From IMG/VR virus record IMGVR_UViG_3300032562_000004, positions 1 to 64,000 of that record: DNA of 64,000 bases; one strand, 5' to 3'. A model generated the notes under the pieces. That model was not told where the DNA came from and did no database searches. It was given only the letters and a program-made list of their open reading frames with translations. Position numbers and translations under genes: made by a program. The first letter of the stretch is position 1, and every line of letters starts with the position of its first letter. Below, piece after piece: positions 940 through 18,640 of the stretch.

Positions 940-957
940 TGTTGTTTTGGTACAACA
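940..957. promoter_or_regulatory. palindromic operator-like site, copy 1
   Basis: TGTTG-ttttggta-CAACA just upstream of the -35. Confidence 0.65.
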
Positions 958-1058
958 TTTCTATTCACACTTCCGTTGACAAAACCAGTCAAAATATACA
1001 CTTTTGTTGACATTCCGAGCAATTATAGGTGGTTATTAACACTTTTGTTGACACACAC

Positions 1059-1301
1059 TCATTTTGTCCAATCTCTGGTTGTAACCAATCCAATATCCCT
1101 GGCCTTTGGTGATTGCATTTGGTCAATCATTCCCATCATGAGGCGGATTGTATTTCTCTCTGCCATTGGAATATCCACACAATAAATGGCCTCTTCAATC
1201 GCCAATTGTGCAAAGTCAATCAAATCTTCTTTGGTATACATCATGTAATCATCCATTTTGGATTTTTCAAGCAACTTCTCTAAATTTTCGTAATCATTCA
1301 T
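1059..1301 (-). CDS. hypothetical protein
   Basis: 80-aa ORF. Confidence 0.65.
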   Translation of the reverse strand: MNDYENLEKLLEKSKMDDYMMYTKEDLIDFAQLAIEEAIYCVDIPMAERNTIRLMMGMIDQMQSPKARDIGLVTTRDWTK

Positions 1302-1390
1302 TTTAATCCCTCGTCATTATCCAATAAGTAAATATTGAACCAAATATGTAACCAATGGCATATGCCAAATAACACCAATATAATATAAAA

Positions 1391-1705
1391 TCACTCATCA
1401 TTAACCTTTACATTAATATTCATCAACTGCTTAATAGTGGGTGACCATGTATCACGCCAGTCCTCTAAAAATGCCACCTGTTGTTTCAATTCTTTTATTT
1501 CGGCTTGTTGCTGGCTAATGGTTAGGTTTAGAAAATCAATATCTACATCTCTCGATACAGCTTTTTGAATATCTACCAATTCCATTAAGTTAGTTATTTC
1601 AGCTTGTTGCTGGCGTAGCGTGGTGGCGGCTTGTTGCATGGTGTCATAATGCTTTTGTTCCATCCCAACGTTTTCTAATTCATCAGCTAGTTCATTTGCG
1701 TTCAT
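1391..1705 (-). CDS. hypothetical coiled-coil protein
   Basis: 104-aa ORF with a QQQAEI motif twice; ATGA-type overlap with the neighbour. Confidence 0.65.
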   Translation of the reverse strand: MNANELADELENVGMEQKHYDTMQQAATTLRQQQAEITNLMELVDIQKAVSRDVDIDFLNLTISQQQAEIKELKQQVAFLEDWRDTWSPTIKQLMNINVKVNDE

Positions 1706-1989
1706 GTTAATCTCCCCGATTCAAATCGTTCTTGCCATTGTTTACTACGATATTGCTCTTGCTCATATGCCACTTTTAATTGTGTAATTTGTAATTCATA
1801 TTGCTTCATATAACTCAATGCAATATCTAAATCAGTTTGCACTTTATCATGCTCATCCTGTAAACCACGCAACATTACTACTGCCTTCTTAACATGGTGA
1901 TACCGAAACCCATGAGTGTCCATGGCATCTGCCAATAACCGTGGAGTCCATTCTATTGCTTTTCCTTCACATTCACCAATAATTACCAT
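1702..1989 (-). CDS. hypothetical protein
   Basis: 95-aa ORF overlapping both neighbours. Confidence 0.65.
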   Translation of the reverse strand: MVIIGECEGKAIEWTPRLLADAMDTHGFRYHHVKKAVVMLRGLQDEHDKVQTDLDIALSYMKQYELQITQLKVAYEQEQYRSKQWQERFESGRLT

Positions 1990-2171
1990 TGTTCTACCTT
2001 TTCTAATGCTCTAATCAATTCAGATACCACTCGTTTATCAATATTAATAAACATTGTTTTATTCACTTGGTTGGGATACAATTGAATTCTCACCTTATCT
2101 CCCATATCAATTATGGAAGCGTATTGAAGGCCTTGTGATTCAATCGTGGTTGTTGGATAAATTGTGTTCAT
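1983..2171 (-). CDS. hypothetical protein
   Basis: 62-aa ORF, coupled. Confidence 0.6.
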   Translation of the reverse strand: MNTIYPTTTIESQGLQYASIIDMGDKVRIQLYPNQVNKTMFINIDKRVVSELIRALEKVEQW

Positions 2172-2362
2172 TTTCTATATTCCGTAACTGATTCAGCATC
2201 TATCCAAGTTTGATTTTCTTCGTACCAATACTGTAATATAGGACCAACCTTGTCCTCTAACTTTTCTTTAACCGCTCTCCAGCCTATTTGGTGCTCACGG
2301 CCATAAAAATCTATATCCTCTTGGGTCACATGATTCTGTCGTGTTACATATCTTACTTTCAT
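2168..2362 (-). CDS. hypothetical protein
   Basis: 64-aa ORF, 4-nt overlaps. Confidence 0.6.
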   Translation of the reverse strand: MKVRYVTRQNHVTQEDIDFYGREHQIGWRAVKEKLEDKVGPILQYWYEENQTWIDAESVTEYRK

Positions 2363-2568
2363 TCTTCAACTCCAAAATGTTTAAGCAATTCATCTTCAAT
2401 ATCACCGCATCCAATATTCAACGCTACCGCACCACATTCTCGCACAATCAACTCAGCGAACTTGGTTACACCGACATCACCTAAAACCCAACTTGGCCAA
2501 TCGTTTTGATTACCAGAACTGTACTGACCACCTGCATCTAACAGTAATTGTTTAATCTTCTCATTCAT
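2359..2568 (-). CDS. hypothetical phage protein (KFAELIVREC family)
   Basis: 69-aa ORF with the MNEKIKQL...KFAELIVREC motif common in phage early regions. Confidence 0.65.
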   Translation of the reverse strand: MNEKIKQLLLDAGGQYSSGNQNDWPSWVLGDVGVTKFAELIVRECGAVALNIGCGDIEDELLKHFGVEE

Positions 2569-2761
2569 AATATACTTTCAATTCATTACCTTGATAATCT
2601 TTAACTTTAATATGGCCTTTACCCATATACTTTATAAACTGTGTAATAAACCATCGTGGTACATAATCATTAAACTCCACACTAGGTGTTTTGGTTACAA
2701 TTACAGTATCACTAGAATTAAAGAACAGGTTGTTCATATCTTTGCACTCGCATATCTTCAT
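2561..2761 (-). CDS. hypothetical protein
   Basis: 66-aa ORF. Confidence 0.55.
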   Translation of the reverse strand: MKICECKDMNNLFFNSSDTVIVTKTPSVEFNDYVPRWFITQFIKYMGKGHIKVKDYQGNELKVYYE

Positions 2762-2975
2762 TCAAAATCAAATCAATTTCTTCTAATGTTTGTGTTACCA
2801 AAATATCATCAAACGATAAAGTTACTATGCGAGTAACCGGAATATCCGGCTCACAAGGTATTTGTAATATATCTTCATGGTAATACTGAATGTGATTGGA
2901 GTTAATGCGAATTGATTGTTGGTGATAACCCCCCGACATCAATTCACGAATCTGTTTTAATTTAATAATCATCAT
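2718..2975 (-). CDS. hypothetical protein (start uncertain)
   Basis: 85-aa ORF. Confidence 0.5.
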   Translation of the reverse strand: MMIIKLKQIRELMSGGYHQQSIRINSNHIQYYHEDILQIPCEPDIPVTRIVTLSFDDILVTQTLEEIDLILNEDMRVQRYEQPVL

Positions 2976-3339
2976 ATCCTTCCGCCCAAGTTATTTTTGG
3001 ATTTTCTCTTTCATACAATTCAACAATATCTTTGAATTTCCACATTGCATCAGTTTCAAAAGTATTCAACCAATTACTAAATCTACCCCAATCTTGGTCA
3101 GTCATTGGTGGTATACCAATCTCTGCACCATATGGTCCTAAATCATTACCATTGCAATCAATACGACCACACGAATACGATTGAGTAATCTCATTATACT
3201 CAAATGATTCACCAGCTTTTCTGCCAGTTAATTTAGAATCTTCTGTTAGTGTTCGTGTTACTCTTTTAGTTAATCCACGGTCAATATACCATTGCATATT
3301 GATAACACCCATCCAATTGGTAGAATATCTTACTGGCAT
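2962..3339 (-). CDS. hypothetical protein
   Basis: 125-aa ORF abutting the upstream stop. Confidence 0.7.
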   Translation of the reverse strand: MPVRYSTNWMGVINMQWYIDRGLTKRVTRTLTEDSKLTGRKAGESFEYNEITQSYSCGRIDCNGNDLGPYGAEIGIPPMTDQDWGRFSNWLNTFETDAMWKFKDIVELYERENPKITWAEGYDDY

Positions 3340-3561
3340 TTATTTACTTTCATCAATAGGTGGATAATCAAGGTAATTACCAAACTCACTACGATACAAA
3401 ACCGCATCGTCTAAAATTTGTATTTCCAAATCATGGTGCAATATATCATAATCAAGAAAAGTATAATCTTCACGATATACACGAAACACATGGCGGTCGC
3501 CAACACGAATAAGAATGCCCTTCATACCTTTGGCTGATTCGGTGCCTCGTAATCTATTCAT
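3340..3561 (-). CDS. hypothetical protein
   Basis: 73-aa ORF. Confidence 0.65.
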   Translation of the reverse strand: MNRLRGTESAKGMKGILIRVGDRHVFRVYREDYTFLDYDILHHDLEIQILDDAVLYRSEFGNYLDYPPIDESK

Positions 3562-3752
3562 TTTCTTGCTCTCATCATTGCATCTGCCATTTTATAACAA
3601 TGTTCTGCTGTGAAATCCGTATCATCAACTGGCTTTATATGAAAATTCATTGTTGTTAATGCTTTAGCGGCAAAGTAATCACGCAAGTCCATGCCTTCAC
3701 CACTTTGTTTACCATCAGAACTTATCCATTCTAAACTAGGAAATGCTTTCAT
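3558..3752 (-). CDS. hypothetical phage protein (GMxLRDYFAAKA family)
   Basis: GMDLRDYFAAKAL...YKMADAMMRAR motif. Confidence 0.7.
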   Translation of the reverse strand: MKAFPSLEWISSDGKQSGEGMDLRDYFAAKALTTMNFHIKPVDDTDFTAEHCYKMADAMMRARK

Positions 3753-3753
3753 T

Positions 3754-3951
3754 TTAACCCCCATAATAATCAATCAATATATCCAATGCAGCAATATACT
3801 TACCATATAATACCACATCTTCAGGATGAATCCAATACTTTGGATCTTTCTTTTTCTTCTTCAATTCTTCTTTATGATACTCTCTGGCATTTTGCATAGT
3901 GGCTAATGTAATACCATCAGCAACTTCATAACTAATTTCAAGCTTCTTCAT
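3754..3951 (-). CDS. hypothetical protein
   Basis: 65-aa ORF. Confidence 0.6.
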   Translation of the reverse strand: MKKLEISYEVADGITLATMQNAREYHKEELKKKKKDPKYWIHPEDVVLYGKYIAALDILIDYYGG

Positions 3952-4130
3952 TATTCAGCCTCTGCAAAATTACAATAAACTTCTTTATAAATTGTTTTGA
4001 TAGTATCATTAGGATAATTATCTCCACAATATTCTTTAACTTCTTCAACATCAAAGAATTGCACATGAATGGTTCTGCCGGATTCAAACTCGACCATATA
4101 AACACTTTCATAATCTGAATCGTAACTCAT
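3951..4130 (-). CDS. hypothetical protein (59 aa, below track cutoff)
   Basis: MSYDSDYESVYMVEFESGRTIHVQFF... read by hand; fills the gap exactly. Confidence 0.6.
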   Translation of the reverse strand: MSYDSDYESVYMVEFESGRTIHVQFFDVEEVKEYCGDNYPNDTIKTIYKEVYCNFAEAE

Positions 4131-4594
4131 GCTACTTCCTTTTCTTTACAGAATTCAGTAAACTCTTTTAAATTACCTTTGAAGATAATATCATGCGTAT
4201 CACCACTCATGCCAAACATATTGCAACCACAATTATACACTTCAATACGGAATACTTCACCACTCAATAAACCATTCTCACTAAAGATATGATATTCATA
4301 ATCTTGGCCGCAATCGGTAATATCAACAGGATGAATATAGAAACCACCAGGCGTTTGCTTAAAATGAGCAACCATCGATGCCGCTAAACAACCCATACCA
4401 TTATAAACTGCTTCATCAACTGTTTTGGTTGCAATCAAGCCATTCACTAAACGACCACCATTCAAAAACTCTGCCAACTCTGCACCATGGCCTTCAGGAT
4501 AGCCATCGAATTGCCGATACATATTCACAACTGGTTTTTGTATTTGACCGTATTTTTCATATACAAATGTAAGGGATCTTGTTCCCATAATCAA
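4127..4594 (-). CDS. hypothetical phage protein
   Basis: MGTRSLT...YRQFDGYPEGHG motif family. Confidence 0.75.
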   Translation of the reverse strand: MIMGTRSLTFVYEKYGQIQKPVVNMYRQFDGYPEGHGAELAEFLNGGRLVNGLIATKTVDEAVYNGMGCLAASMVAHFKQTPGGFYIHPVDITDCGQDYEYHIFSENGLLSGEVFRIEVYNCGCNMFGMSGDTHDIIFKGNLKEFTEFCKEKEVA

Positions 4595-4782
4595 TACCTC
4601 GCTAAATGTGTTTCAAATTTTTCTTCATACATCTCTACAATAGATTCATCATGCAGCTCACGCATATTATCTACCATCAATACTTTGGTTAATTCTACCA
4701 ATTCGGATTTTTTCATCTTCTTTACTACAAGCATATCTTCTGCAACTAATTCACTAATCAATCTGTCGATTTGTTTACTCAT
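4591..4782 (-). CDS. hypothetical protein
   Basis: 63-aa ORF. Confidence 0.6.
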   Translation of the reverse strand: MSKQIDRLISELVAEDMLVVKKMKKSELVELTKVLMVDNMRELHDESIVEMYEEKFETHLARY

Positions 4783-4900
4783 TTAATAATTTTATAACCT
4801 TTTAATAAAATTTGTTCAACATATAATTCCACAATCGGTTGTGAATCTTCAAAACCTTGTTGTAACGATTTCAATTCTTTAATCACAAAATCCCATGTGT

Positions 4901-5206
4901 TCATGCGCCACACCACCTTATATTTTTATAATCACCAGTTAATACATTACCACGCTTAAAGTTACGAGCAGGAGCATTCCAACTTGCCGACTTTAGAATA
5001 TCACCACGCTTAAACTTTTTATCATCTTTCAACATAATCCAAGAATGTGAACTTTTTTGGTTATCACTCATAATCACATGGACATACTTACGACCAACTT
5101 CATATGAAAACTCTTTATTAACATAACCATTAGAACCATAATCTTTTCGTAGATGGCCAACATACAACGCCAAACCAAATTCTAAATCTGCATTACCTAA
5201 TTTCAT
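4901..5206 (-). CDS. conserved T4-like phage hypothetical protein
   Basis: GRKY...GDILKSASWNAPARNFKRGNV motif seen in aquatic T4-like phages. Confidence 0.7.
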   Translation of the reverse strand: MKLGNADLEFGLALYVGHLRKDYGSNGYVNKEFSYEVGRKYVHVIMSDNQKSSHSWIMLKDDKKFKRGDILKSASWNAPARNFKRGNVLTGDYKNIRWCGA

Positions 5207-5214
5207 AAAAGCTC

Positions 5215-5532
5215 CTAAACATCGTAGCGGTGATGAACCACTAAAATATATTCAAATGGTAGTTCCTCGAAAGGAGCATCCTTATCATACAATGTGTTAA
5301 TATACACAGATACAGATTTACAAAAATAACTACCTGCCTCGGCTGTCGTATCTTGCCAGAAATACTCTCTTGCTAGATTATGTAAATCATTATGATTTAA
5401 ACCATCTGTATGATTATGGACATTGTAATAACTATCCCAGCCATCAATACCAAAGTTTAATGAACCAACCTCAGTTAATATAAAATCATCAAGGTTAATT
5501 GTTCCATTTTCCTTCATTGCACACATAATCAA
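5215..5532 (-). CDS. hypothetical protein
   Basis: 105-aa ORF. Confidence 0.6.
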   Translation of the reverse strand: MIMCAMKENGTINLDDFILTEVGSLNFGIDGWDSYYNVHNHTDGLNHNDLHNLAREYFWQDTTAEAGSYFCKSVSVYINTLYDKDAPFEELPFEYILVVHHRYDV

Positions 5533-5843
5533 TGACTCCTATTATTTGCCCATTGAACGCCACGCTGAAATGCTTCACGCTCAATTCTCAACTCATTGGT
5601 GGTACGAGCATCACGCATATACACATCAAATGCTTTAGCATTACGCTTACGGGTAGAACCTTTGAAACCTGGTTGAGGACGAGGACCTCTAAACATTACA
5701 AAATACTTGGTGAAATCAATAAACGGCAATACTTCAGCATAACGACCAAACGGCACACCTTTATAACTTGAACGAAAACCAATCGGTGTAACATAATCAG
5801 TCAAGGCATTTTGCATTGCTATTTCTTTTAAACGATATTCCAT
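5529..5843 (-). CDS. hypothetical protein
   Basis: GGAG RBS before MEYRLKE. Confidence 0.6.
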   Translation of the reverse strand: MEYRLKEIAMQNALTDYVTPIGFRSSYKGVPFGRYAEVLPFIDFTKYFVMFRGPRPQPGFKGSTRKRNAKAFDVYMRDARTTNELRIEREAFQRGVQWANNRSH

Positions 5844-5896
5844 ATTAACTCCAAAAAGATGTGGTCTTATATCCGACAGAATGCCACATTCAAACA

Positions 5897-6181
5897 TTAT
5901 ACTTTACTTAAATTTACCACTCTAAAATCAAATTCCATAAAACCTGTTTCATGTGGTACATACATTAAAGCACCAACACGATTAGTTTTCTTTGCTTTTG
6001 TTTCGTATTTTTTAAACTTATCTGATGTAACTTCAATTTTAAATGCTTTGTAACCACCTTCCATATTGTTGGCATCAATTACAATACCTTCAATAAATGC
6101 ATCATCACGACCTGCCATTGGTTTAAAATCATAGGCACGGATAATATCACCAACTTTTGCAACTCCAGTAAATTTCAACAT
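5897..6181 (-). CDS. hypothetical protein
   Basis: GAGGA RBS before MLKFTG; promoter at 6236-6264. Confidence 0.7.
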   Translation of the reverse strand: MLKFTGVAKVGDIIRAYDFKPMAGRDDAFIEGIVIDANNMEGGYKAFKIEVTSDKFKKYETKAKKTNRVGALMYVPHETGFMEFDFRVVNLSKV

Positions 6182-6235
6182 AAATCCTCTTTTTTGTGTT
6201 TTACTTTGAAAACTCTTTATAATCAATAATGTACC

Positions 6236-6298
6236 ATTATAAAGGATGCCTGAAAAAACCACAAGCATTCTTTATAAAAGTGTTGTACCGAAACAACA
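6236..6298 (-). promoter_or_regulatory. promoter plus palindrome copy 2
   Basis: TTGTGG-N17-TATAAT; TGTTG-taccgaaa-CAACA at 6281-6298. Confidence 0.6.
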
Positions 6299-6311
6299 CC
6301 ATTATATTTTA

Positions 6312-6503
6312 CTACCAACTGCGTACCGTAAAACATTCAATTTCCACAGATTCAGTTTCATCCAAATCTTCTGGTTTTATTTGACTTTCAGCATTACGAG
6401 CAAAAGCTACTGCCGCATCATTATTATCAAATACTGCCAGATTTGTCCAATCCCAACCAATCAATTCTTCAAAATGACCAGATTTTACCAAATATACTTC
6501 CAT
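6312..6503 (-). CDS. hypothetical acidic protein
   Basis: MEVYLV...AVFDNNDAAVAFA; resembles 7383..7565. Confidence 0.6.
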   Translation of the reverse strand: MEVYLVKSGHFEELIGWDWTNLAVFDNNDAAVAFARNAESQIKPEDLDETESVEIECFTVRSW

Positions 6504-6700
6504 TATGCTCTCCATGAAGCGTCATCAATTAATTGCTCTTCGATTTGGTCAAAGGCATCCAATGCATCAATAATACAAGAGTCGGCGCAGCTCATCTGAC
6601 TCTCAACATCTTCCAAACCATTTTCACAAGCATAATGATAAACATCAGATAATAATGCCTGTGCTGTTTTCAGCTTTTCAACCATTTCTTGATTAATCAT
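6503..6700 (-). CDS. hypothetical protein
   Basis: 65-aa acidic ORF. Confidence 0.6.
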   Translation of the reverse strand: MINQEMVEKLKTAQALLSDVYHYACENGLEDVESQMSCADSCIIDALDAFDQIEEQLIDDASWRA

Positions 6701-6920: not shown

Positions 6921-6921
6921 A

Positions 6922-7884: not shown

Positions 7885-7902
7885 ATTATCTTTCTTTTTT
7901 AA

Positions 7903-8395: not shown

Positions 8396-9148
8396 TCACG
8401 CTGCCAATTTTAATTCAATTGTTGGATACTTAACGAAACCACTTGTATCCTTCTTTGCTTTACCTTTAGCATATAATCCAACAATAACACCTTTTGGATC
8501 TAAAAAGCGTAAATCACTTTCATCGCCATTATATACTGGCAAACCAAGGTAAGTATCGGGCATTGGTAATGTTTTCTTAATACCAAATACTACAGCAATA
8601 TTATAACCTTGCTTAATCGCTTCACGCACATCATTATCATTACCATCAGCGGCCGAGAAGGTTAAACTATAATTACTAATATGATTAACTTTACGACCTA
8701 ATACTTTTGAATAATCATAGAAGGTAACAAAACCAAACGCCGCAAAGATATTAGAGTAAGTAACATTACCCATAGTAACTGGATATTTCTCCCATGAAAT
8801 ATCGCTAGTACCATTTAAACGAATAACTGGAACTAAACCTGCTTTGGCAGATTGCTTAATCGCCAAGTTAATATCTTTCACCAATAACTCCATAAACAGG
8901 TCACGATTATCAAAGAATAGATTAGTTTTACGAATCCGTGCTTTTTGAATAGTATTAGTATTCTCGCCTTTTTTAAACATACCGCCACGACCAGCAGTAT
9001 TCAAACACGCAGAAATGCAACCTGGTGTTGCTTTAGGACAGGTATTATGACCTGATAATGATGCTGGTGCTAAATGAAGAATATAGGTATTATAACCTTG
9101 CTTCATTCCCTTTAAAGTCTTGGGATTACCGACTGATAATAAATTCAT
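8396..9148 (-). CDS. GP88-like phage protein (Cys-rich, putative Fe-S)
   Basis: HLAPA...NTCPKATPGCISACLNTAGRG, IRLNGTSD, FYDYSK, GDESDLRFLD. Confidence 0.7.
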   Translation of the reverse strand: MNLLSVGNPKTLKGMKQGYNTYILHLAPASLSGHNTCPKATPGCISACLNTAGRGGMFKKGENTNTIQKARIRKTNLFFDNRDLFMELLVKDINLAIKQSAKAGLVPVIRLNGTSDISWEKYPVTMGNVTYSNIFAAFGFVTFYDYSKVLGRKVNHISNYSLTFSAADGNDNDVREAIKQGYNIAVVFGIKKTLPMPDTYLGLPVYNGDESDLRFLDPKGVIVGLYAKGKAKKDTSGFVKYPTIELKLAA

Positions 9149-9203: not shown

Positions 9204-9297
9204 ATTATACAGGCATTAGAATGAACCACAATCAAATTGGCACATTCCAATACGGTTTCTCTGTCGAAAAACCAGTATGTGTTGTATCGGAACAACG
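9204..9297 (-). promoter_or_regulatory. promoter plus palindrome copy 3
   Basis: TTGTGG-N16-TATAAT; TGTTG-tatcggaa-CAACG at 9280-9297. Confidence 0.55.
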
Positions 9298-9828: not shown

Positions 9829-10269
9829 TTATAATAAACCACTAATAATACTGCCTGCTGAATTATTCATAATGCTACGATATAATTCACCTTTAATTCT
9901 TTTTACCAATTCCGAACGATTATTCCATGACCTCATAAAGGATAATGGTGATGCATCATGATTATTACCATAATAAATCCATTCTCTACCATGATTATAG
10001 TTTACTTTATATTCTTTACCTTTTAAGTTAATTATAGTGGGATTAAATAAACTCTTAATATCTGCCTCCACTTTAGTAACCATTGGAATATATTCAGAAT
10101 GGATTATAGTATAATCTAATGGTGTAGATTGACTTAATCCCGCCATTCTATTATTCGGTGTCTTTTTAGTAATACCGATTTTAATCCAACCTGGCATACT
10201 CTTATTAAAAGCAATATAAAAATAACCATTATTCCTTTTAGATAATAGATTATGCTTTGAATTTCTCAT
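9829..10269 (-). CDS. T5orf172-type GIY-YIG domain protein
   Basis: GYFYIAFNKSMPGWIKIGITKKTPNNRM...E...GREW. Confidence 0.75.
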   Translation of the reverse strand: MRNSKHNLLSKRNNGYFYIAFNKSMPGWIKIGITKKTPNNRMAGLSQSTPLDYTIIHSEYIPMVTKVEADIKSLFNPTIINLKGKEYKVNYNHGREWIYYGNNHDASPLSFMRSWNNRSELVKRIKGELYRSIMNNSAGSIISGLL

Positions 10270-10414
10270 AATCAATGACCACAAGCAGATAGAAAACGGT
10301 TAATATCAAATAACCGATTATCATTTTTAAACTGAACCGCCATATCAGAACATAATTGAAATGGTGCTTTATTCTCAAATAATACTCTTGCCAACATAAT
10401 ATAATGCTTTTTAC

Positions 10415-10717
10415 TCATAATCTCTCCGTATCAAATAATTTACTTTTAATAACTCTATAATACTGACCATTCATCCATACCATTTTCTCATATGATAATG
10501 CACGGATAATAGTCCTTATTGACCTATTGTATATCTGAATAATACGAGAACCAGATATACCATAATCTTTACCTAAATCTTTATTAGTACCATTATCAAG
10601 AATATAGTGCAATACAATACTATAATCTCTCTCAGATAATACTTCCTGAGCTATATCTAATACCTCATGGCATAATACGATATTATCCAAATCGTTATCT
10701 TCCACTATATTGCTCAT
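10415..10717 (-). CDS. sigma70 region-4-like HTH protein
   Basis: LSERDYSIVL...TNKDLGKDYGISGSRIIQIYNRSIRTI resembles region 4.2. Confidence 0.7.
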   Translation of the reverse strand: MSNIVEDNDLDNIVLCHEVLDIAQEVLSERDYSIVLHYILDNGTNKDLGKDYGISGSRIIQIYNRSIRTIIRALSYEKMVWMNGQYYRVIKSKLFDTERL

Positions 10718-10991
10718 AATGATGCTCCGTATATTACTTTAAAATCTATTCTATATTACTTTTGGTTATATGTCGCTATAATGGTCGGGATATAGGTGCT
10801 CTTGAATGGTCTTAATTTCTATTTCTGATTATCCTAGAGAATCCTAGTTAATCCACAAAGATTTTCCGAGCATATTCACAATATCATAATACCATAATAA
10901 CTAATATAATCAATAACTTAATACTAATAACCACTATGCGTATCAGAATACCACAATGGTTATTATATTACTACTGATTATCTCTATACTA

Positions 10992-11268: not shown

Positions 11269-11613
11269 TTAAGCAAATCTGCGATATAATCTAATACCAG
11301 CTTTTGCGCCTCTTACTGCTTTACTGGTTAATCGGTCGCTTTTAGTGGTAATAATACGACCACCATTATTGAGATAATCCAGAATATCGTGCTGGATGGC
11401 AATATCTTGGATAATACGCTTATTGGTTACTGGTTTATCATATTGCTTACCAGTAAAGGCCTTAGCGATATTATTAGCCACGATATACTCATTATCCATA
11501 ATGGCAGCTTTTTTGGCAGCAGCTTTTTCCTTACGCTTAATAGAGGATATATCCTGATTAACTCGGGATAATAACTGCTTTAATTCAATAATCGATAAAT
11601 TTTTAATATCCAT
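11269..11613 (-). CDS. hypothetical basic protein
   Basis: 114-aa ORF, first after the promoter at 11676-11703. Confidence 0.7.
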   Translation of the reverse strand: MDIKNLSIIELKQLLSRVNQDISSIKRKEKAAAKKAAIMDNEYIVANNIAKAFTGKQYDKPVTNKRIIQDIAIQHDILDYLNNGGRIITTKSDRLTSKAVRGAKAGIRLYRRFA

Positions 11614-11675
11614 ATAATCCTAATAATAATATAATCGATAAAAACACCAAAGCGGTGCGCAGAACCGATTTTATA

Positions 11676-11703
11676 AGTATACAGGAACCATGGAAAAGGT
11701 CAA
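11676..11703 (-). promoter_or_regulatory. sigma70-type promoter
   Basis: TTGACC-N16-TATACT. Confidence 0.6.
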
Positions 11704-11760: not shown

Positions 11761-11870
11761 GTGTTGTTTTGGAGCAACGACTGTGGCAGATTGGAGAGCA
11801 GCTTTGAGGCGCTCAGAGGTAAAAGTGTTGTTTTGGAGCAACGCCGGAGAGCAGTATGGAAAAAAGCTCA
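11761..11870. repeat. imperfect ~64-bp tandem repeat containing palindrome copies 4 and 5
   Basis: GTGTTGTTTTGGAGCAACG at 11761 and 11825, each followed by GGAGAGCAG and GCTCAG. Confidence 0.8.
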
Positions 11871-12811: not shown

Positions 12812-12967
12812 ATGAACTTCTTAAAACAAATTTCGGACGCTTTGAAGTCCTTCTTTAATACTTATGGTCCTATGACTTTAGACGAGTATATCTCTCTAAA
12901 GCGTCCTCAGAATAATGCCGACTTGGATCGCATTGTTCGTGAGTTTAACGAACTTCGTTACTGGTAA
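12812..12967 (+). CDS. small plus-strand protein (51 aa)
   Basis: AAGGA RBS; MNFLKQISDALKSFFNTYGPMTLDEYISLKRPQNNADLDRIVREFNELRYW; late-like TATAAGTA at 12754-12761. Confidence 0.7.
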   Translation: MNFLKQISDALKSFFNTYGPMTLDEYISLKRPQNNADLDRIVREFNELRYW

Positions 12968-13023
12968 GCCCCGGAAGCGAAGCCCCGGAAGCGCTTGAAA
13001 AACTTCTTGTTCTTTGAGCGCTT
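12966..13023. terminator. 14-bp tandem repeat and hairpin between convergent genes
   Basis: AAGCCCCGGAAGCG twice, then AAGCGCTTGAAAAAC...GTTCTTTGAGCGCTT stem. Confidence 0.55.
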
Positions 13024-13243
13024 ATAATGATTGTTGTTCGGTTAGGCCACGCCACTCGATAATTTTAAGTTTCGTTCCGCCAATATCATCCTCTGGCCCA
13101 AAATATTCCCGCCATTCGGTGCCGTTCCAATATGCTTTATGTGGAAACGGCCACGACCTTACTTTGACCTCGTAGATACCTTCGTAAACTGGTTTGATTT
13201 CTTTACTGAACCAGTCGGTCGTTTCGTATTGAACTTCTGACAT
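13022..13243 (-). CDS. hypothetical protein
   Basis: MSEVQYETTDWF...PVYEGIYEV...WRGL. Confidence 0.7.
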   Translation of the reverse strand: MSEVQYETTDWFSKEIKPVYEGIYEVKVRSWPFPHKAYWNGTEWREYFGPEDDIGGTKLKIIEWRGLTEQQSL

Positions 13244-13244
13244 A

Positions 13245-13547
13245 TTACTCGCCTTCGAACACCAGAACCAAATCTTCTTCGTCAACAATCCAATATTCAA
13301 TATTCTCATATTTTACTTTCTTTGCTTTTTGCCAGTTAGGTAGAATCACCTGACCAACTTCAACAATCGTAACATCAGGACCAATTGCAACGATTTTACC
13401 ACGGGAAGCTTCTTCTCTATCAGCAGAAGCTAAAACAATACCACCTTTAGATACTGTATCTTTTTTAACTGCTTCAAGGATAATATTTGCTCTGATTGGT
13501 TTGATACCGATACCAGCTGGTGTTGCTTTAGATTTTTTGGTTGCCAT
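13245..13547 (-). CDS. groES: GroES-like co-chaperonin
   Basis: IKPIRANIIL...SKGGIVL...GKIVAIGP...VGQVIL. Confidence 0.85.
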   Translation of the reverse strand: MATKKSKATPAGIGIKPIRANIILEAVKKDTVSKGGIVLASADREEASRGKIVAIGPDVTIVEVGQVILPNWQKAKKVKYENIEYWIVDEEDLVLVFEGE

Positions 13548-13758
13548 AAATTTTCTTTCTACATTCTTCAATTACTTTGGTGGGAACATCGGGGTGCCAA
13601 CCACCGATTAACATATCACAATTATACTTGATAGGCGTTATCTTGGCAACGATTTTATGGTAATCATCATCAGAAACGAAACCATAGACCACAAAGAATG
13701 CCAGTATTGTGGCAAACATTTTGATTGTGGTTATAGTATCATACCTATCTTTAAACAT
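13528..13758 (-). CDS. hypothetical membrane-anchored protein
   Basis: N-terminal TM; YNCDMLIGGWHPDVP. Confidence 0.65.
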   Translation of the reverse strand: MFKDRYDTITTIKMFATILAFFVVYGFVSDDDYHKIVAKITPIKYNCDMLIGGWHPDVPTKVIEECRKKIYGNQKI

Positions 13759-14557
13759 TTATTTTAAGCATTTCTTCATAAGAATAATTTTGTATCATAT
13801 ACTTGGACGGTTTCTCTAGATAACAAGCTTCTAGGTCACCAGGTCGTCTTGGTAGAACATTCACTTTAAATTTCTTATTGTTTACTTTCTTGTAAATCTC
13901 AATAATTTCTTTGACTGTTCTGGTATCACCATAAGCAAGGTTTTCAATATCTCTGGAAGGTTCATCGATTGCTTTAATAATGGCAGAACAAATATCATTC
14001 ACATGGACATATTCACGAACACATGTTCCATCTTTGGTGTTGTAATCATCTCCATACAGATTAAATCCATCTTTACTGGCCTTCACTAGATTCAATAAAA
14101 TGCCTTCTGGATTGGTTGGAGGAAATCCGTCTGTACCAATTACATTATAGAATCGGAAGATAGTATAATCGTAAGCCTTCTCTTTTACAATATCTTCGGC
14201 AACACGTTTAGAGAATCCATAAGGAGAATCTGGATTAGATGCGGCGCCCGTAGAGGCAAAGATGAAATTGTGGTGTCTTACTTTTTCTAAAAGATTGATT
14301 GTACCACCAACATTCGTTTCATAATAATCGGTAGGATTTTTAACAGATTCACCAACACGAACCAAAGCAGCCAAATGAATTACGGTATGAAATTCCATAT
14401 CACAAGTAAACATATTACGGATATCTAAATTTTCCATACCTGTGCCGGCAATATCAAAACCGTACAAATCAATATCAGGTCTAGTTTCAAAAATCATTTG
14501 CCATAGATGGCGACCAATGTAACCTTTATGACCTGTAATCAATACTCTTTTTTTCAT
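13751..14557 (-). CDS. galE: NAD-dependent epimerase (UDP-glucose 4-epimerase-like)
   Basis: TGHKGYIG, HLAA, YGFSK, FRFYNV, GTCVREYVHV, RRPGD. Confidence 0.85.
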   Translation of the reverse strand: MKKRVLITGHKGYIGRHLWQMIFETRPDIDLYGFDIAGTGMENLDIRNMFTCDMEFHTVIHLAALVRVGESVKNPTDYYETNVGGTINLLEKVRHHNFIFASTGAASNPDSPYGFSKRVAEDIVKEKAYDYTIFRFYNVIGTDGFPPTNPEGILLNLVKASKDGFNLYGDDYNTKDGTCVREYVHVNDICSAIIKAIDEPSRDIENLAYGDTRTVKEIIEIYKKVNNKKFKVNVLPRRPGDLEACYLEKPSKYMIQNYSYEEMLKINV

Positions 14558-14724
14558 TTTGTTTTCTTTTTCTTACATTCACACCAAGATTCTTTTTTAC
14601 CACAAACATTGCAGTAACCTTTTAGAATTGGTCTATCACCAAAAATTGTATTCCACTTCTCTGCAAATTCTTCCTTTGGAATCACAAAAGGTCTTGGAGA
14701 ACTTCCTTTTCCACCGTCACTCAT
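14554..14724 (-). CDS. hypothetical protein (56 aa)
   Basis: MSDGGKGSSPRPF...CNVCGKKESWCEC read by hand; ATGA overlap. Confidence 0.65.
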   Translation of the reverse strand: MSDGGKGSSPRPFVIPKEEFAEKWNTIFGDRPILKGYCNVCGKKESWCECKKKKTK

Positions 14725-14835
14725 TATCTTCCTAACTGTTGTTTTAATTGGTCCATGATTTGTTTCACTTCATTTCTCATATAATTATTTTTTGGCAACC
14801 AAACATATATTCGATTTAATAATTGTAGTAATTGC

Positions 14836-15102
14836 TCAGGGTTCATTATTATCTTTTAAGAATTTAATTACTGGTAATTTGTTTGCTACCAACACATAAG
14901 CTTCTTTTAATGTTGGTGTAATAACTTTGCAATGAAATATACCATCTTTAATCATGATATCGAAAGGTGCTAATCCGACAAAGCTTTCATCAACAATACA
15001 ACGAATATGCCAAGATTTGGCAGTCTTGCATCTTTTAATTAAATCATCATAGATTTTTTTAGGATCAAAGGGATCAAATAAAGCAACTTCAGACATTTTC
15101 AT
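14836..15102 (-). CDS. hypothetical protein
   Basis: 88-aa ORF. Confidence 0.65.
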   Translation of the reverse strand: MKMSEVALFDPFDPKKIYDDLIKRCKTAKSWHIRCIVDESFVGLAPFDIMIKDGIFHCKVITPTLKEAYVLVANKLPVIKFLKDNNEP

Positions 15103-15292
15103 TCAATAAACTAGGACCATTATTACTTTCACTCAAGGTAAAACTTTCAGCAAGTTGTTCCGCTTTACTAAAGTCAGATACAACTTCTTTATTAATGATT
15201 CTACCTTTTAGGTAATAATTAACGGTATATGAAAAATCTTTTCTTTCGACAATAGCTTTTTTATCACCATTGGTAAACTTAGACAGTTCCAT
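15089..15292 (-). CDS. hypothetical protein
   Basis: MELSKF start; similar to the upstream neighbour. Confidence 0.65.
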   Translation of the reverse strand: MELSKFTNGDKKAIVERKDFSYTVNYYLKGRIINKEVVSDFSKAEQLAESFTLSESNNGPSLLNENV

Positions 15293-15494
15293 GAATTTCT
15301 CCCCATACAAATTGTTCAGCATAAGATTGTGCTTCGGATTCTTCTTTAAAGAATTTGGTTTCCATTAATACTAGACCATCATCGTCAGCACAATCAACTT
15401 CAAACATATCAAATATATTTCTCCAAATAATAGTGGCAGTTTTTCTACCACTATTACCTACAAAAGTAACGATTCGTTTTTCGCCATCCATCAT
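15279..15494 (-). CDS. hypothetical protein
   Basis: 71-aa ORF; ends AQSYAEQFV like its neighbour. Confidence 0.65.
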   Translation of the reverse strand: MMDGEKRIVTFVGNSGRKTATIIWRNIFDMFEVDCADDDGLVLMETKFFKEESEAQSYAEQFVWGEIHGTV

Positions 15495-17620
15495 GATATC
15501 ATTCCTACAAAACGATTTAATACAACACGGTTATTCAAACGATTACCTGCATATTTACTGAAAGCAGAAACCAAACCACGAGTAGTTGCATTTTCTTTAA
15601 CAGTAAATTCTACATCATCATCAGTATCTAGGCCTTCTGCACGGAGAAGATAATACTCATCGTAACCAGCAGATGTAACAACCATAGATTTGTTTTTACG
15701 AAATTCATATTTAATTTTATCGTGTAGGTTGTAAGAAAGATTAGGATAGAACCAATGTAATTCACGACCAAGTTCACGACCACTTAAAACATAAAAACCA
15801 ACAATGTTACATTCTGTACGAGCCTTCAACATTTTAATATATTGAGCAGTTAATTCACGACCATGTGGATTATCTACTTTAACTTCAGATTTAGTTTTAG
15901 GATCACGAATCACCATTTTCTTATGTTTACCATAAACATATTCACTACTTGTACCTGAAGTTTTATAACCATCAGCATTAGTATAATATACATCACGCAA
16001 AGTATGGCCATCACCATCGGTTAAGAATACAGTATTTACAATCTGTAATTTATATTGTTTCTGAAATTCAGGAACAATTTTCATGGCAGAAATAACTGTT
16101 TCATTTAATGGTGTACCACCCATTTGGAACCAATATGGTTTGAATGAACGATGGTGTGATAAGCTTACCAAAGCAGCACCAGCATAAGAAAATTCAGAAG
16201 CAGACATTTTGCTCGATAATAAATTCAACAATTTAAAATTGCGCAAAACAATATCGCCTTCTTTAAATTCACCAGAATAACAATCGTTATGTTCAGATGT
16301 AAAAGCATAAACATCATAAGGAATGTTTACCTTCTTACAGAACATTACTAAGTTAATTAACTGCTTGATTGTATTCTCTAAATGGTTGTGCATACTACCT
16401 GACCAGTCTAAGAACATTACAAGACCGTGAGATTTACCATTAGGCAATACGGTAATTTTCTTAAACAAATCTTCAGCAAACTGGTATGAATAGATTTTGC
16501 TCATATTCAATTCACCAGTTTTAGCAATAGATGCACGTTTCAATTGGTCGGCATTTTTACGCAACTCAAATTCTTTGGCCAAATAACCAACAACTTTCTT
16601 GGCATCATTACGGAGTTTTTGAAATCCTTCTTTATCCTGACCTGTAGGACGATAATATCTATCGTTTTCAAATTTAATTAATTCTGCACGATAATCATTC
16701 CACAATTTTTTATGTGTAACAATGGCTTTATTTAAATCAATATCAGGAATATTTCCATAATATAGAATATCACTAGAGGTATCAAATAATTTACTTTCAT
16801 TCTTACGATAGTTTTCATCGGTGAAAGATTTTATTTGATCTTTCGAATCGAATTCAGGATTATTACCACCAGCACGGGTTGCCTCGGCATTTATATCTTC
16901 CGTTTCTTCACCGTCATCAGAATCTTCTGTATCGGAATTAGATTCACGGGTTTCGGTCTCATCGTCCCATTCATCAGAATCATCATATCCTTCGGAATCA
17001 AAGCTTTCATAATCACCATCTTCATCTTCTTCAAACATTTCGGGATTATTCTTCTTGCGTTCTTCGGCTTCATGCTTCATGAAGTCCATTACTAAACGAG
17101 CAACTTCAATTACATCTTCATAAGTTTCGGTATTTTCGATACGATTGACCAAGTATTGCTCAGCATCATTAAATTTAATTCCTTGTGTTGCACCACCTTT
17201 AGTGTAAAGGTTAACACGGTCAATAAAATTCAATTCATTCAAATCAACGTCTTTAGTACCAAAGAAATCTTTTTCAATCAATTCTTTGTACGCACGAATA
17301 AACGAGGAACGAATTCCTGGATATTTGTTTTTGATTTTACGCTCAATACGAGAATCTTCCAATACGTTCATAATGGACATTGGAAGTTTTTCTTCATGTG
17401 CTTGAATCAAACCATCTAGAGGAGTATAAAGTGCATGGCCGACCTCATGACCCATAAACAAGTCATAGAGATAGCCAGAGATATTTTTATCTAAAATGGG
17501 TACAGTTAATACACGTTGTTTAACATCAAAAGATGCAGTTTGCACATTTCTTTGCTCAATAGTGAGATTTTCTGTTGCCATTAACTTGGCAAGTAACGAT
17601 TTTGACTGAATGAGTTCCAT
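15491..17620 (-). CDS. metallopeptidase-VWA protein (CobT-like, T4-like phages)
   Basis: HEVGH zincin motif, acidic linker, MIDAS DWSGS, GGTPL, FLTDGD. Confidence 0.85.
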   Translation of the reverse strand: MELIQSKSLLAKLMATENLTIEQRNVQTASFDVKQRVLTVPILDKNISGYLYDLFMGHEVGHALYTPLDGLIQAHEEKLPMSIMNVLEDSRIERKIKNKYPGIRSSFIRAYKELIEKDFFGTKDVDLNELNFIDRVNLYTKGGATQGIKFNDAEQYLVNRIENTETYEDVIEVARLVMDFMKHEAEERKKNNPEMFEEDEDGDYESFDSEGYDDSDEWDDETETRESNSDTEDSDDGEETEDINAEATRAGGNNPEFDSKDQIKSFTDENYRKNESKLFDTSSDILYYGNIPDIDLNKAIVTHKKLWNDYRAELIKFENDRYYRPTGQDKEGFQKLRNDAKKVVGYLAKEFELRKNADQLKRASIAKTGELNMSKIYSYQFAEDLFKKITVLPNGKSHGLVMFLDWSGSMHNHLENTIKQLINLVMFCKKVNIPYDVYAFTSEHNDCYSGEFKEGDIVLRNFKLLNLLSSKMSASEFSYAGAALVSLSHHRSFKPYWFQMGGTPLNETVISAMKIVPEFQKQYKLQIVNTVFLTDGDGHTLRDVYYTNADGYKTSGTSSEYVYGKHKKMVIRDPKTKSEVKVDNPHGRELTAQYIKMLKARTECNIVGFYVLSGRELGRELHWFYPNLSYNLHDKIKYEFRKNKSMVVTSAGYDEYYLLRAEGLDTDDDVEFTVKENATTRGLVSAFSKYAGNRLNNRVVLNRFVGMIS

Positions 17621-17642
17621 GAATTCTCCGATTTAAAAGACC

Positions 17643-17705
17643 ATTATACTCTAATTATCGCTTACCGTCAAATGTTTTCTGAAAATGCGTTGTTTTTTAG
17701 CAACA
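17643..17705 (-). promoter_or_regulatory. promoter plus palindrome copy 6
   Basis: TTGACG-N17-TATAAT; CGTTG-ttttttag-CAACA at 17688-17705. Confidence 0.7.
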
Positions 17706-17708
17706 CCA

Positions 17709-17873
17709 TCAATCTTGATAAATTACCTTGCGTTTTTGGTAGTCGGAAAGGTCTTTTTCCATGCCGGATAACGTTGCCCATTTTCGGATTACGATATCCA
17801 ACTTTTTCCAATAAGGAATTTCTTCATCATCCGCTTTTGCATCGAGCCAAATGTAGTGTCCGTTGTTACTCAT
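17709..17873 (-). CDS. hypothetical protein
   Basis: MSNNGH start, 54 aa. Confidence 0.55.
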   Translation of the reverse strand: MSNNGHYIWLDAKADDEEIPYWKKLDIVIRKWATLSGMEKDLSDYQKRKVIYQD

Positions 17874-18054
17874 GTTTATTTCCTTCGTTTTTTTCAAAAA
17901 AATTCTGCTCAATTGCAGATGCCAAGCGATCCGCAAGCTTTGGATCGAACTTTACTAAAAAATACGCAACATCTTCTGTTGGTACATGACGCAAATTGAA
18001 CATAATTTCATCAATTCCACGCAAAATTTGCGATTCTTCTTGCTGTCTTAGCAT
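17866..18054 (-). CDS. hypothetical protein
   Basis: 62-aa ORF with GAGGA RBS. Confidence 0.65.
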   Translation of the reverse strand: MLRQQEESQILRGIDEIMFNLRHVPTEDVAYFLVKFDPKLADRLASAIEQNFFEKNEGNKHE

Positions 18055-18061
18055 AATTTCC

Positions 18062-18220
18062 TCATTGTAAAGTGTCGGTTTGCACAGAAGTCACTACACT
18101 GCCTCTTTCCTTCGCAATTCCGACTGATTTTAACCATTCAATCTCAATTTGTAACTCTTCCTCTGTCAAGGTTTCCAAATATTCTTCATATTCGGCCCAA
18201 TCTTCTGCTGAAATGCTCAT
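18062..18220 (-). CDS. hypothetical acidic protein (52 aa)
   Basis: MSISAEDWAEYEEYLETL... read by hand. Confidence 0.6.
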   Translation of the reverse strand: MSISAEDWAEYEEYLETLTEEELQIEIEWLKSVGIAKERGSVVTSVQTDTLQ

Positions 18221-18558
18221 CTTCTCATACTCGATATGTCTTTGGCTTCATTATCTGTGAATACCGGCACAGCATTTGATTTATGCATGGTACCGATGCC
18301 TTTAATTTTGTCTCCTGTGTAGGAATTTTGCAATCTTTTTGTGCAAGGAATAAATCCTGTGTCTAAAGATTTAAAGTCAGGGGTTTCCCTGTGGAAAGGT
18401 ACCATCTTTTTCAGAGGTAGTTTAGTTTTAATGACGGGAGAATGTGAATATCTTTTTGAAGATATTTTATTGATAGCCTCTAACCATTGATGCTTTTGCT
18501 CTTGTTGAGCTTTAGTTAGTTTTTTTGGCTTTGATTTGGGAATATAACCGTATATCAT
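18217..18558 (-). CDS. conserved T4-like hypothetical protein
   Basis: YTGDKIKGIGTMHKSNAVPVF...AKDISSMRR motif. Confidence 0.8.
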   Translation of the reverse strand: MIYGYIPKSKPKKLTKAQQEQKHQWLEAINKISSKRYSHSPVIKTKLPLKKMVPFHRETPDFKSLDTGFIPCTKRLQNSYTGDKIKGIGTMHKSNAVPVFTDNEAKDISSMRR

Positions 18559-18586
18559 ATAATCAATTTCTCCATGTGAAGAAACA

Positions 18587-18640
18587 ATTATATAACAGGA
18601 GGTGCTGGATGTCAAGCGCTGGTGTTGTATGGAAGCAACA
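18587..18640 (-). promoter_or_regulatory. promoter plus palindrome copy 7
   Basis: TTGACA-N17-TATAAT; TGTTG-tatggaag-CAACA at 18623-18640. Confidence 0.75.

What the first reader, a model, noticed from the sequence alone, without database searches (positions are those of the whole stretch)
940..18640. Seven copies of a (T/C)GTTG-N8-CAAC(A/G) palindrome upstream of early sigma70-type promoters
Seen at 940, 6281, 9280, 11762, 11826, 17688 and 18623. Each lies ~6-60 bp upstream of a -35/-10 pair (the second tandem copy ~120 bp), and all spacers start with T and have A at position 7. None was noticed near late promoters or past 19 kb. It is not the CTGT-N8-ACAG LexA box. Inference: operator or activator site of a dimeric regulator defining an early regulon.
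Basis: partly seen in the sequence, partly recalled or inferred. Interest (0 to 1): 0.6.

Follow-up and report, generated by a model that had tools for sequence, protein, structure and literature searches.

The report
Phased palindromic operator at phage early promoters
An 18-bp palindrome (TGTTGY-N6-RCAACA) sits on one face of the DNA helix upstream of a conserved subset of strong early promoters in an uncultured freshwater T4-like phage lineage, and most likely binds a still unidentified dimeric regulator.

Summary
The genes lie on the minus strand, and each copy is upstream of a sigma70-type promoter there.

The window is the first 64 kb of a 235.8-kb uncultured T4-like phage without AsiA or MotA. 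Two more genuine copies lie outside it, at 156440 and 160143.

Related metagenomic phages keep the palindrome at the same promoters. Its arms are as conserved as the -35, the -10 and the ribosome-binding site, while the spacer drifts. Cultured outgroup phages show no enrichment.

Distances to the -10 follow a 10.5-bp period (p about 2e-5). Orthologous promoters have a gap to the -35 of 4-7 or 15-17 bp, never 8-14. The hairpins are weak, and the sixth arm position is often a C·A mismatch.

This fits a dimeric protein operator that works through contact with RNA polymerase. It does not fit a terminator hairpin. Whether it activates or represses is open, and so is the binder. A clade-specific winged-helix protein (157372-157713) fits best among the predicted DNA-binding ORFs I tested. 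The closest described analogues are PeSL cassettes and the P2 Ogr element.

The parts
940..957 (-). Palindrome copy 1. The gap to the -35 is 6 nt. It lies upstream of a small membrane ORF and the SWIM-finger ORF 411-806.
906..933 (-). Sigma70-type promoter TTGACA-16-TATAAT (12 of 12 matches), driven from below copy 1.
6281..6298 (-). Palindrome copy 2. The gap to the -35 (TTGTGG) is 16 nt. It lies upstream of the 94-aa ORF 5897-6181.
6236..6264 (-). Promoter TTGTGG-17-TATAATGGT.
   Evidence: read by eye
9280..9297 (-). Palindrome copy 3, 70 nt from the -10. It lies upstream of the GP88-family ORF 8396-9148. The same 70-nt distance is seen in relative G002.
9204..9231 (-). Promoter TTGTGG-16-TATAATGGT.
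11762..11779 (-). Palindrome copy 4, the proximal one of the tandem pair, 80 nt from the -10. It lies upstream of the 114-aa ORF 11269-11613.
11826..11843 (-). Palindrome copy 5, the distal one of the tandem pair, 64 bp centre to centre from copy 4. The same pair is 75 bp apart in G001.
11676..11703 (-). Promoter TTGACC-16-TATACT of the 114-aa gene.
17688..17705 (-). Palindrome copy 6. The gap to the -35 is 16 nt. It lies upstream of the 709-aa peptidase/vWA-like ORF 15491-17620 (phrog_459).
17643..17671 (-). Promoter TTGACG-17-TATAATGGT.
18623..18640 (-). Palindrome copy 7. The gap to the -35 is 7 nt. It lies upstream of the 113-aa ORF 18217-18558 (phrog_27048).
18587..18615 (-). Promoter TTGACA-17-TATAAT (12 of 12 matches).
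10415..10717 (-). It is listed here only because I tested it and found it a poor fit by distribution.

Best explanation
The palindrome TGTTGY-N6-RCAACA is a two-fold symmetric operator for a dimeric sequence-specific DNA-binding protein. In each half the protein reads TGTTG, followed by a pyrimidine and A/T-rich inner flanks.

The site sits on one fixed face of the helix upstream of a conserved subset of consensus sigma70-type early promoters. With the -10 hexamer taken as -12 to -7, its centre is near -50 or -60, and at three sites near -92, -102 and -166. From there the bound protein most likely touches RNA polymerase, probably the alpha C-terminal domain (inferred).

Two outcomes are possible. 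It could boost these promoters, as in class I activation. Because the core promoters are already near consensus, it could instead clamp the polymerase and shut them off after the early phase, as phi29 p4 does at a strong promoter.

The binder is more likely phage-encoded than host-encoded. The best phage-encoded candidate is the clade-specific 113-aa winged-helix protein at genome 157372-157713, outside the window.

Shown: the element, its selection pattern, its phasing and the conserved set of genes behind it. Inferred: protein binding, contact with the polymerase, the sign of regulation and the identity of the binder.
For: Enrichment:
- 7 matches against 0.04 expected in the window, and 9 promoter-linked copies in the whole genome.

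Conservation:
- Homologous loci from 80 related IMG/VR contigs, whose 709-aa protein is 56-100% identical to ours, almost all carry the palindrome about 85 nt upstream of that gene and at the next promoter upstream.
- In an alignment made without reference to the motif (62 unique upstream regions), the GTTG and CAAC columns are as conserved as TTGAC, ATAAT and GGAG. The spacer and flanks vary.

Not a hairpin:
- The sixth arm positions pair as T-A 51, C·A 38, T·G 16 and C-G 0.
- RNA hairpin energies are -4.8 to -8.5 kcal/mol, with z-scores no stronger than -1.8 for seven of the eight sites folded.
- No terminator-like call falls on the transcribed strand at any copy.

Phasing:
- The nine distances to the -10 give a Rayleigh R of 0.915, peaking at a period of 10.5 bp, with Monte Carlo p = 2e-5.
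- Across relatives the gap to the -35 is 4-7 nt (51 sites) or 15-17 nt (54 sites), and never 8-14.
- The tandem pair is 64 bp apart here and 75 bp apart in G001, a difference of one turn.

Regulon and distribution:
- The same genes sit behind the motif in G000 to G003.
- The core pattern is enriched 16, 15 and 12 against 4, 5 and 4 for the control in relatives. It is not enriched in Melnitz, S-CREM1 or S-CAM3.

Candidate binder:
- The winged-helix ORF is present in G001, G002, G003 and G005 and absent from 50,697 cultured phage records.
- It folds as a winged helix with pLDDT 77.
- Its putative recognition helix is invariant over 30 homologues.
- It has its own sigma70-type promoter without the palindrome.
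- The genome has no AsiA or MotA.
Against: - No binding or expression data exist. No RNA run was listed.
- The promoters are near consensus and need no activator. The sites do not overlap the core promoter, as classical repressor sites do, so the sign of regulation is unknown.
- The winged-helix assignment rests on phyletic pattern and fold only. Many clade-specific ORFs of unknown function share that pattern, and I screened only about 30 of the genome's ORFs for DNA-binding domains, so another candidate could have been missed.
- The dimer prediction could not be run.
- In G001 and G002 one extra copy lies in the 5' leader right before the ribosome-binding site of the 114-aa gene. That position does not fit pure upstream activation.
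- Sequences from relatives are not independent samples, so the counts overstate the number of independent events.
Confidence: 0.6

Rival explanations
1. The element and mechanism are the same, but the binder is a host transcription factor. The phage lineage would use it to fire or gate a subset of early promoters before any phage protein exists.
For: These are early-type sigma70 promoters that must work on naked injected DNA. The motif is restricted to one phage clade, which could simply reflect one host group. No phage protein has been tied to the site.
Against: The host is unknown. The record is an uncultured IMG/VR virus, so relatives and host could not be drawn and host genomes could not be scanned. 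No paper in the library mentions this motif. From my own knowledge, the geometry matches no common global regulator: CRP, FNR and NtcA sites are 2-4 bp shorter, and the LexA half-site differs. The arms are invariant across phages whose 709-aa protein has diverged to about 56% identity. That would require an equally invariant factor in all their hosts.
Confidence: 0.22
2. It is the stem-loop part of a PeSL-type composite cassette, a terminator/attenuator plus early promoter. Such cassettes are described in T4-like phages. The palindrome would act as a hairpin in RNA or DNA and as a recombination hotspot, not as a protein site.
For: PeSLs place a stem-loop just upstream of sigma70-like early promoters in T4-type phages, and some have short conserved stems such as AGNA-loop-TCNT in PST/T4 (PMC4122927; PMC2839356). 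Five of the nine copies begin between -10 and +44 nt from the stop codon of the upstream gene. The distance between the two conserved promoters varies from 928 to 1769 bp among relatives. That variation fits gain and loss of cassettes between the elements. The 6281 copy folds well, at -12.6 kcal/mol.
Against: The hairpins are otherwise weak and no better than shuffled sequence. There is no consistent U-tract and no terminator-like call on the transcribed strand. The arm sequence itself is invariant, with no compensatory changes. C·A mismatches are frequent and C-G is absent at the sixth pair. Strict helical phasing to the -10, including copies 70-144 nt away, has no explanation under a terminator model. 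If recombination kept the copies alike, the spacers would be homogenised too, and they are not.
Confidence: 0.12
3. It is a chance or compositional repeat, or a by-product of duplicated promoter cassettes, with no function of its own.
For: Copies 940 and 160143 share an identical 18-mer and similar promoter flanks, so some copies may descend from duplication.
Against: Zero of 100 shuffles reach the observed count. The control pattern is 3-4 times rarer in relatives. Arm columns are conserved and spacers free at orthologous sites over deep divergence. The site is phased to the promoter.
Confidence: 0.03

Closest known systems
PeSL (promoter-early stem-loop) cassettes of T4-like phages RB49/phi1, PST/T4 and nt-1/KVP40 (PMC2839356, PMC4122927)
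   Same: Both occur in T4-type phages. Both have a short inverted repeat just upstream of strong sigma70-like early promoters, in gene-dense regions of small ORFs, often directly after the previous gene. The repeat sequence is lineage-specific in both.
   Different: PeSL stems are described as structures. In RB49 they are G/C-rich and terminate transcription, and their position varies. Here the stem is weak, the arm sequence rather than the pairing is conserved, the sixth pair is often mismatched, and the site is phased to the promoter. I did not test for a recombination role.
Ogr/Delta/B-dependent late promoter element of P2, P4 and 186 (TGT-N12-ACA centred near -55; PMC3931495) and TGTTGT-N13-ACAACA of Ralstonia phage phiRSY1 (PMC5694545)
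   Same: The pattern here is formally a TGT-N12-ACA dyad with the same TGTTGT/ACAACA half-site. It is centred near -50 or -60 and upstream of the polymerase. From my own knowledge, Ogr acts through the alpha subunit.
   Different: P2's annotated activator sites read GTTG-N14-CAAC-like, not N8. P2 late promoters lack a -35, whereas these have a consensus -35. No Ogr_Delta zinc-finger gene is present. The phage type (lytic T4-like) and the timing (early) both differ.
Class I CRP-type activation and phi29 p4
   Same: Both involve an upstream dimer site that works only on one helix face, at steps of about 10.5 bp. p4 activates a weak promoter and represses a strong one through the same contact with alpha-CTD.
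   Different: The half-site and spacing differ: CRP is TGTGA-N6-TCACA, 16 bp. No CRP-like or p4-like protein was identified. This is a functional analogy only.
LexA SOS box CTGT-N8-ACAG
   Same: It has the same N8 geometry and a similar length.
   Different: The half-site is GTTG, not CTGT. The sites lie upstream of the -35 rather than over the core promoter.
T4 MotA box / AsiA middle-promoter system
   Same: It is a phage device that marks a subclass of sigma70-dependent promoters.
   Different: The MotA box is an asymmetric element at -30 that replaces the -35. This genome has no AsiA or MotA and keeps a consensus -35.

Membership tests
PeSL (promoter-early stem-loop) | Strong sigma70-like early promoter inside the cassette | tested here: met
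   The promoters read TTGACA/TATAAT at 12/12, 12/12 and 11/12 downstream of copies 18623, 940 and 17688. The -35 and -10 columns are conserved in relatives.
PeSL (promoter-early stem-loop) | Stable stem-loop able to terminate or attenuate upstream transcription | tested here: not met
   Seven of the eight sites folded give -4.8 to -8.5 kcal/mol with z-scores between -0.1 and -1.8. No terminator-like call falls on the transcribed strand. C·A mismatches are frequent at the sixth pair. Termination itself was not assayed.
PeSL (promoter-early stem-loop) | Lies at insertion, deletion or exchange points between close relatives (modular shuffling) | tested here: inconclusive
   The spacing between the two conserved motif-promoters varies from 928 to 1769 bp among relatives. 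Breakpoints were not mapped to the element.
Ogr/Delta-dependent promoter element | TGT-N12-ACA dyad centred near -55 | tested here: inconclusive
   The pattern fits the loose consensus, with centres near -50 and -60. P2's own annotated sites have GTTG and CAAC 14 nt apart rather than 8.
Ogr/Delta-dependent promoter element | Promoter lacks a -35 and depends on the activator | tested here: not met
   A consensus TTGAC -35 is present and conserved.
Ogr/Delta-dependent promoter element | Cognate Ogr_Delta C4 zinc-finger activator encoded by the phage | tested here: not met
   PF04606 has no match in the six-frame search of the whole 235.8-kb genome at E up to 10.
LexA SOS box | CTGT-N8-ACAG half-sites overlapping the core promoter | tested here: not met
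   All copies read GTTG and CAAC and lie upstream of the -35.
Class I activator site (CRP-like) | Function restricted to one helix face at steps of about 10.5 bp upstream of the -35 | tested here: met
   This was met for position only. R is 0.915 at 10.5 bp with p = 2e-5. Gaps are bimodal at 4-7 and 15-17 nt with none at 8-14. The effect on transcription was not tested.
Class I activator site (CRP-like) | CRP/FNR-family half-sites and spacing, and a CRP-family protein | tested here: not met
   The site is an 18-bp TGTTG-N8-CAACA rather than a 16-bp TGTGA-N6-TCACA. None of the roughly 30 ORFs I scanned matched a CRP-family domain. The whole genome was not searched for that family.

The most novel reading that the evidence does not exclude
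An abundant lineage of uncultured freshwater T4-like phages lacks AsiA and MotA. In this reading it runs its early programme with its own small winged-helix factor (the family of ORF 157372-157713, with more than 1000 protein clusters in metagenomes and no Pfam family). The factor binds helically phased TGTTGY-N6-RCAACA operators upstream of consensus sigma70 promoters. It switches that promoter subset on or off through contact with host RNA polymerase. This would be a previously undescribed early-to-middle switch for T4-type phages.
Probability: 0.2. Interest if true: 0.7.

Novelty: new variant of a known kind. Interest (0 to 1): 0.5.

Why it matters
T4-like phages outside the enterobacterial group, such as cyanophages, pelagiphages and this freshwater lineage, lack the AsiA/MotA switch. 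How they order early and middle transcription is poorly understood. Here a well-defined cis-element with strong comparative support marks a conserved set of early genes. That set includes a 709-aa peptidase/vWA-like protein and an AAA ATPase.

The phasing gives a clear, cheap experiment: shift the site by 5 bp and by 10 bp. There is a short list of candidate binders. If the binder is a phage protein, this is a new regulatory module for an abundant environmental phage group. If it is a host factor, the motif could help identify the unknown host.

As it stands, this is a solid but unsurprising kind of finding. It is an operator motif without a known partner.

Tried and rejected
Binder candidates:
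It is found only in G000, G001 and near-identical contigs and has no match in cultured phages. I reject it as a general binder.
- 114-aa ORF 11269-11613. I considered it as an autoregulated binder because its promoter carries 2-3 copies, including one in the 5' leader in G001 and G002. It has no Pfam or PHROG family. Its model is all-helical with pTM 0.33. It is not found in G003, and the Atlas search gave nothing. It remains possible but weaker.
- HTH_39 ORF 73018-73344. It has homologues in Melnitz, HTVC008M and DLP6, and Melnitz shows no motif enrichment, so it is less specific.
- Ten more small conserved early ORFs gave no DNA-binding family.

Known systems:
- No Ogr_Delta, AsiA or MotA was found in the genome.

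Tools that gave nothing or could not run:
- Foldseek gave only generic winged-helix matches, none with E of 0.001 or better.
- No RNA sequencing run was listed.
- Megablast of 10 kb against cultured phages found no match.
- Relatives could not be drawn for a virus record.
- A literature search for the motif string returned 0 papers.

Host:
- The genome has no psbA, so it shows no sign of being a cyanophage.
- I did not scan bacterial genomes for the motif, because the host is unknown and an unspecific scan would return thousands of chance hits.
Full report
**Observation**

The pattern YGTTG-N8-CAACR occurs 9 times in the window, against 0.25 expected from dinucleotide shuffles. The refined pattern YGTTGY-N6-RCAACR finds exactly those seven, against 0.04 expected.

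The other two core matches lie inside coding sequence and lack that feature. Site 21868 is in the RNR small-subunit gene and site 56087 is in a signal-peptide ORF. I treat both as chance.

A at spacer position 7 holds for six of the seven sites, not all.

Genes in 1-23 kb run on the minus strand. Read on that strand, every palindrome lies upstream of a sigma70-type promoter. The three best promoter-like matches in 1-20 kb are the ones below palindromes 18623, 940 and 17688.

**Genome context**

The window is the first 64 kb of a single 235,812-bp virus record with 36% G+C. It is a distant T4-like phage, with a T4-type RNase H and ribonucleotide reductase. Its closest named relatives, at 35-50% protein identity, are Methylophilales phage Melnitz and cyanomyoviruses of the Kyanoviridae.

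It has no AsiA, MotA or psbA. The whole genome holds two more genuine copies, at 156440 and 160143. Both lie upstream of TTGAC-16-TATAATGGT promoters on the minus strand. That makes nine promoter-linked copies in all.

Other perfect sigma70-type promoters, for example in the tRNA region at 162-173 kb, lack the motif. The motif therefore marks a subset of promoters.

**Comparative evidence**

I fetched homologous loci from 80 related IMG/VR contigs. Their 709-aa protein is 56-100% identical to ORF 15491-17620. Nearly all carry the palindrome about 85 nt before that gene, and another at the next promoter upstream. The arms are fixed and the spacers differ widely.

I then aligned the 62 unique upstream regions without reference to the motif. 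The GTTG and CAAC columns are as conserved as TTGAC (-35), ATAAT (-10) and GGAG (ribosome-binding site). The spacer and flanks vary.

In three large relatives the core pattern occurs more often than a reversed control:

| Relative | Size | Core pattern | Reversed control |
|---|---|---|---|
| G001 | 161.8 kb, complete | 16 | 4 |
| G002 | 121.9 kb | 15 | 5 |
| G003 | 107.3 kb | 12 | 4 |

Melnitz, S-CREM1 and S-CAM3 show no excess.

The genes behind the motif are largely the same in G000 to G003:
- a 113-aa protein (phrog_27048)
- the 709-aa peptidase/vWA-like protein (phrog_459)
- a 287-aa AAA ATPase (phrog_1250)
- a 114-aa protein
- a 94-aa protein
- a GP88-family protein
- a SWIM-finger protein
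- a 46-aa protein

**Hairpin or protein site**

The evidence points to sequence recognition by a two-fold symmetric protein, not to selection for pairing:
- The RNA hairpins are weak, at -4.8 to -8.5 kcal/mol, and no better than shuffles for seven of the eight sites folded.
- None is called terminator-like on the transcribed strand.
- The arms never show compensatory change.
- The sixth pair is T-A in 51 sites, C·A in 38, T·G in 16 and C-G in none.
- The inner spacer positions are symmetric and A/T-rich.

**Phasing**

The number of bases between the palindrome and the -10 hexamer at the nine sites is 28, 28, 30, 38, 39, 39, 70, 80 and 144. A Rayleigh test peaks at a period of 10.5 bp, with R = 0.915 and Monte Carlo p = 2e-5. 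Using only the five distinct distance classes gives p = 5e-4.

Across relatives the gap to the -35 is 4-7 nt in 51 sites and 15-17 nt in 54 sites, with none at 8-14. Orthologous promoters switch between the two classes.

The tandem pair upstream of the 114-aa gene is 64 bp apart here and 75 bp apart in G001. The proximal copy keeps 80 nt to the -10 in both. Indels of one helical turn are therefore tolerated, and half turns are not seen.

This is the signature of a bound protein that must face RNA polymerase. With the -10 at -12 to -7, the site centres fall near -49.5, -59.5, -91.5, -101.5 and -165.5.

**Mechanism**

I conclude that this is an operator for a dimeric DNA-binding protein acting through contact with polymerase. 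Whether it activates or represses cannot be told from sequence.

The promoters are near consensus, so they hardly need help. From my own knowledge, phi29 p4 represses a strong promoter and activates a weak one through the same alpha-CTD contact. That makes early shut-off as plausible as activation.

In G001 and G002 an extra copy sits in the 5' leader, right before the ribosome-binding site of the 114-aa gene. This hints at repression, at least there.

**Who binds**

| Candidate | Evidence for | Evidence against |
|---|---|---|
| 114-aa ORF 11269-11613 | Most complex site arrangement, with 2-3 copies at its promoter | No family hit; loose all-helical model (pTM 0.33); absent from G003 |
| HTH_39 ORF 73018-73344 | Predicted winged helix-turn-helix | Also occurs in outgroup phages, and Melnitz, the one tested, shows no motif enrichment |
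| 113-aa ORF at genome 157372-157713 | Best fit (see below) | Evidence is circumstantial |

The 113-aa ORF is present in G001, G002, G003 and G005. It is absent from cultured phage records. It folds as a winged helix with pLDDT 77 and has generic winged-helix structural neighbours.

Its helix 3 and wing are invariant over 30 diverse homologues, from a family of more than 1000 metagenomic clusters with no Pfam family. It is expressed from its own sigma70-type promoter, which has no palindrome.

This evidence is circumstantial, and a host factor remains a serious alternative. The dimer prediction could not be run.

**Comparison with known systems**

The closest described kind is the PeSL cassette of T4-like phages. 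It has a stem-loop just upstream of sigma70-like early promoters and a lineage-specific stem sequence (PMC2839356, PMC4122927). The promoter part matches. The stable-terminator part does not.

The pattern also fits the loose TGT-N12-ACA dyad of Ogr-dependent P2 late promoters (PMC3931495). It shares the TGTTGT/ACAACA half-site reported for phiRSY1 (PMC5694545). However, P2's own annotated sites have the half-sites 14 nt apart rather than 8. Those promoters lack a -35, and no Ogr_Delta gene is present here.

It is not a LexA box. The motif string appears in no paper in the library.

**Verdict**

The element is real and under selection, and it is very probably an operator phased to the promoter. 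I rate it a new variant of a known kind, of moderate interest.

Noticed in passing
window 967-1052 (minus strand): Three direct repeats of GTCAACRRAAGTGT start at 1052, 1011 and 980, just upstream of palindrome 940. They are spaced 41 and 31 nt apart. The repeat is found nowhere else in this genome or in G001-G003. Each copy contains a CAAC half-site.
   Followed up: partly
window 11644-11658 (minus strand): A terminator-like hairpin followed by a T-run lies in the 5' leader of the 114-aa gene, between its promoter and start codon. Relatives G001 and G002 have a copy of the palindrome at the matching place, right before the ribosome-binding site.
   Followed up: partly
window 10718-10991: An unusually long (about 275 nt) A/T-rich non-coding stretch lies upstream of the sigma-region-4-like ORF. 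It contains a TATAATGGT promoter-like site on the opposite (+) strand at 10777.
   Followed up: no
window 9230-9297 and relatives G001:138460, G002:101754: The spacer of palindrome 9280 (TTCCGATAC) recurs as an inverted copy (GTATYGGAA) about 26 nt downstream, between the palindrome and the -35. It is conserved in G001, and G002 has a related but rearranged version.
   Followed up: no
genome 162.9-173.7 kb (L113, L114), outside the window; window 62032-63224: A large tRNA block lies outside the window, with 26 tRNA genes plus a tmRNA-like gene at genome 172714-173131 that encodes a long, atypical tag peptide. Five more tRNA genes lie inside the window.
   Followed up: no
G003:87963-87996 (L106): Two palindrome copies overlap by 2 nt, at a 16-bp offset, upstream of the AAA ATPase gene in relative G003.
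   Followed up: no
window 9829-10284 and 20863-21303: Two ORFs look like homing-endonuclease relatives within the early region. ORF 9829-10284 matches the T5orf172 domain. I judged ORF 20863-21303 GIY-YIG-like by eye.
   Followed up: no
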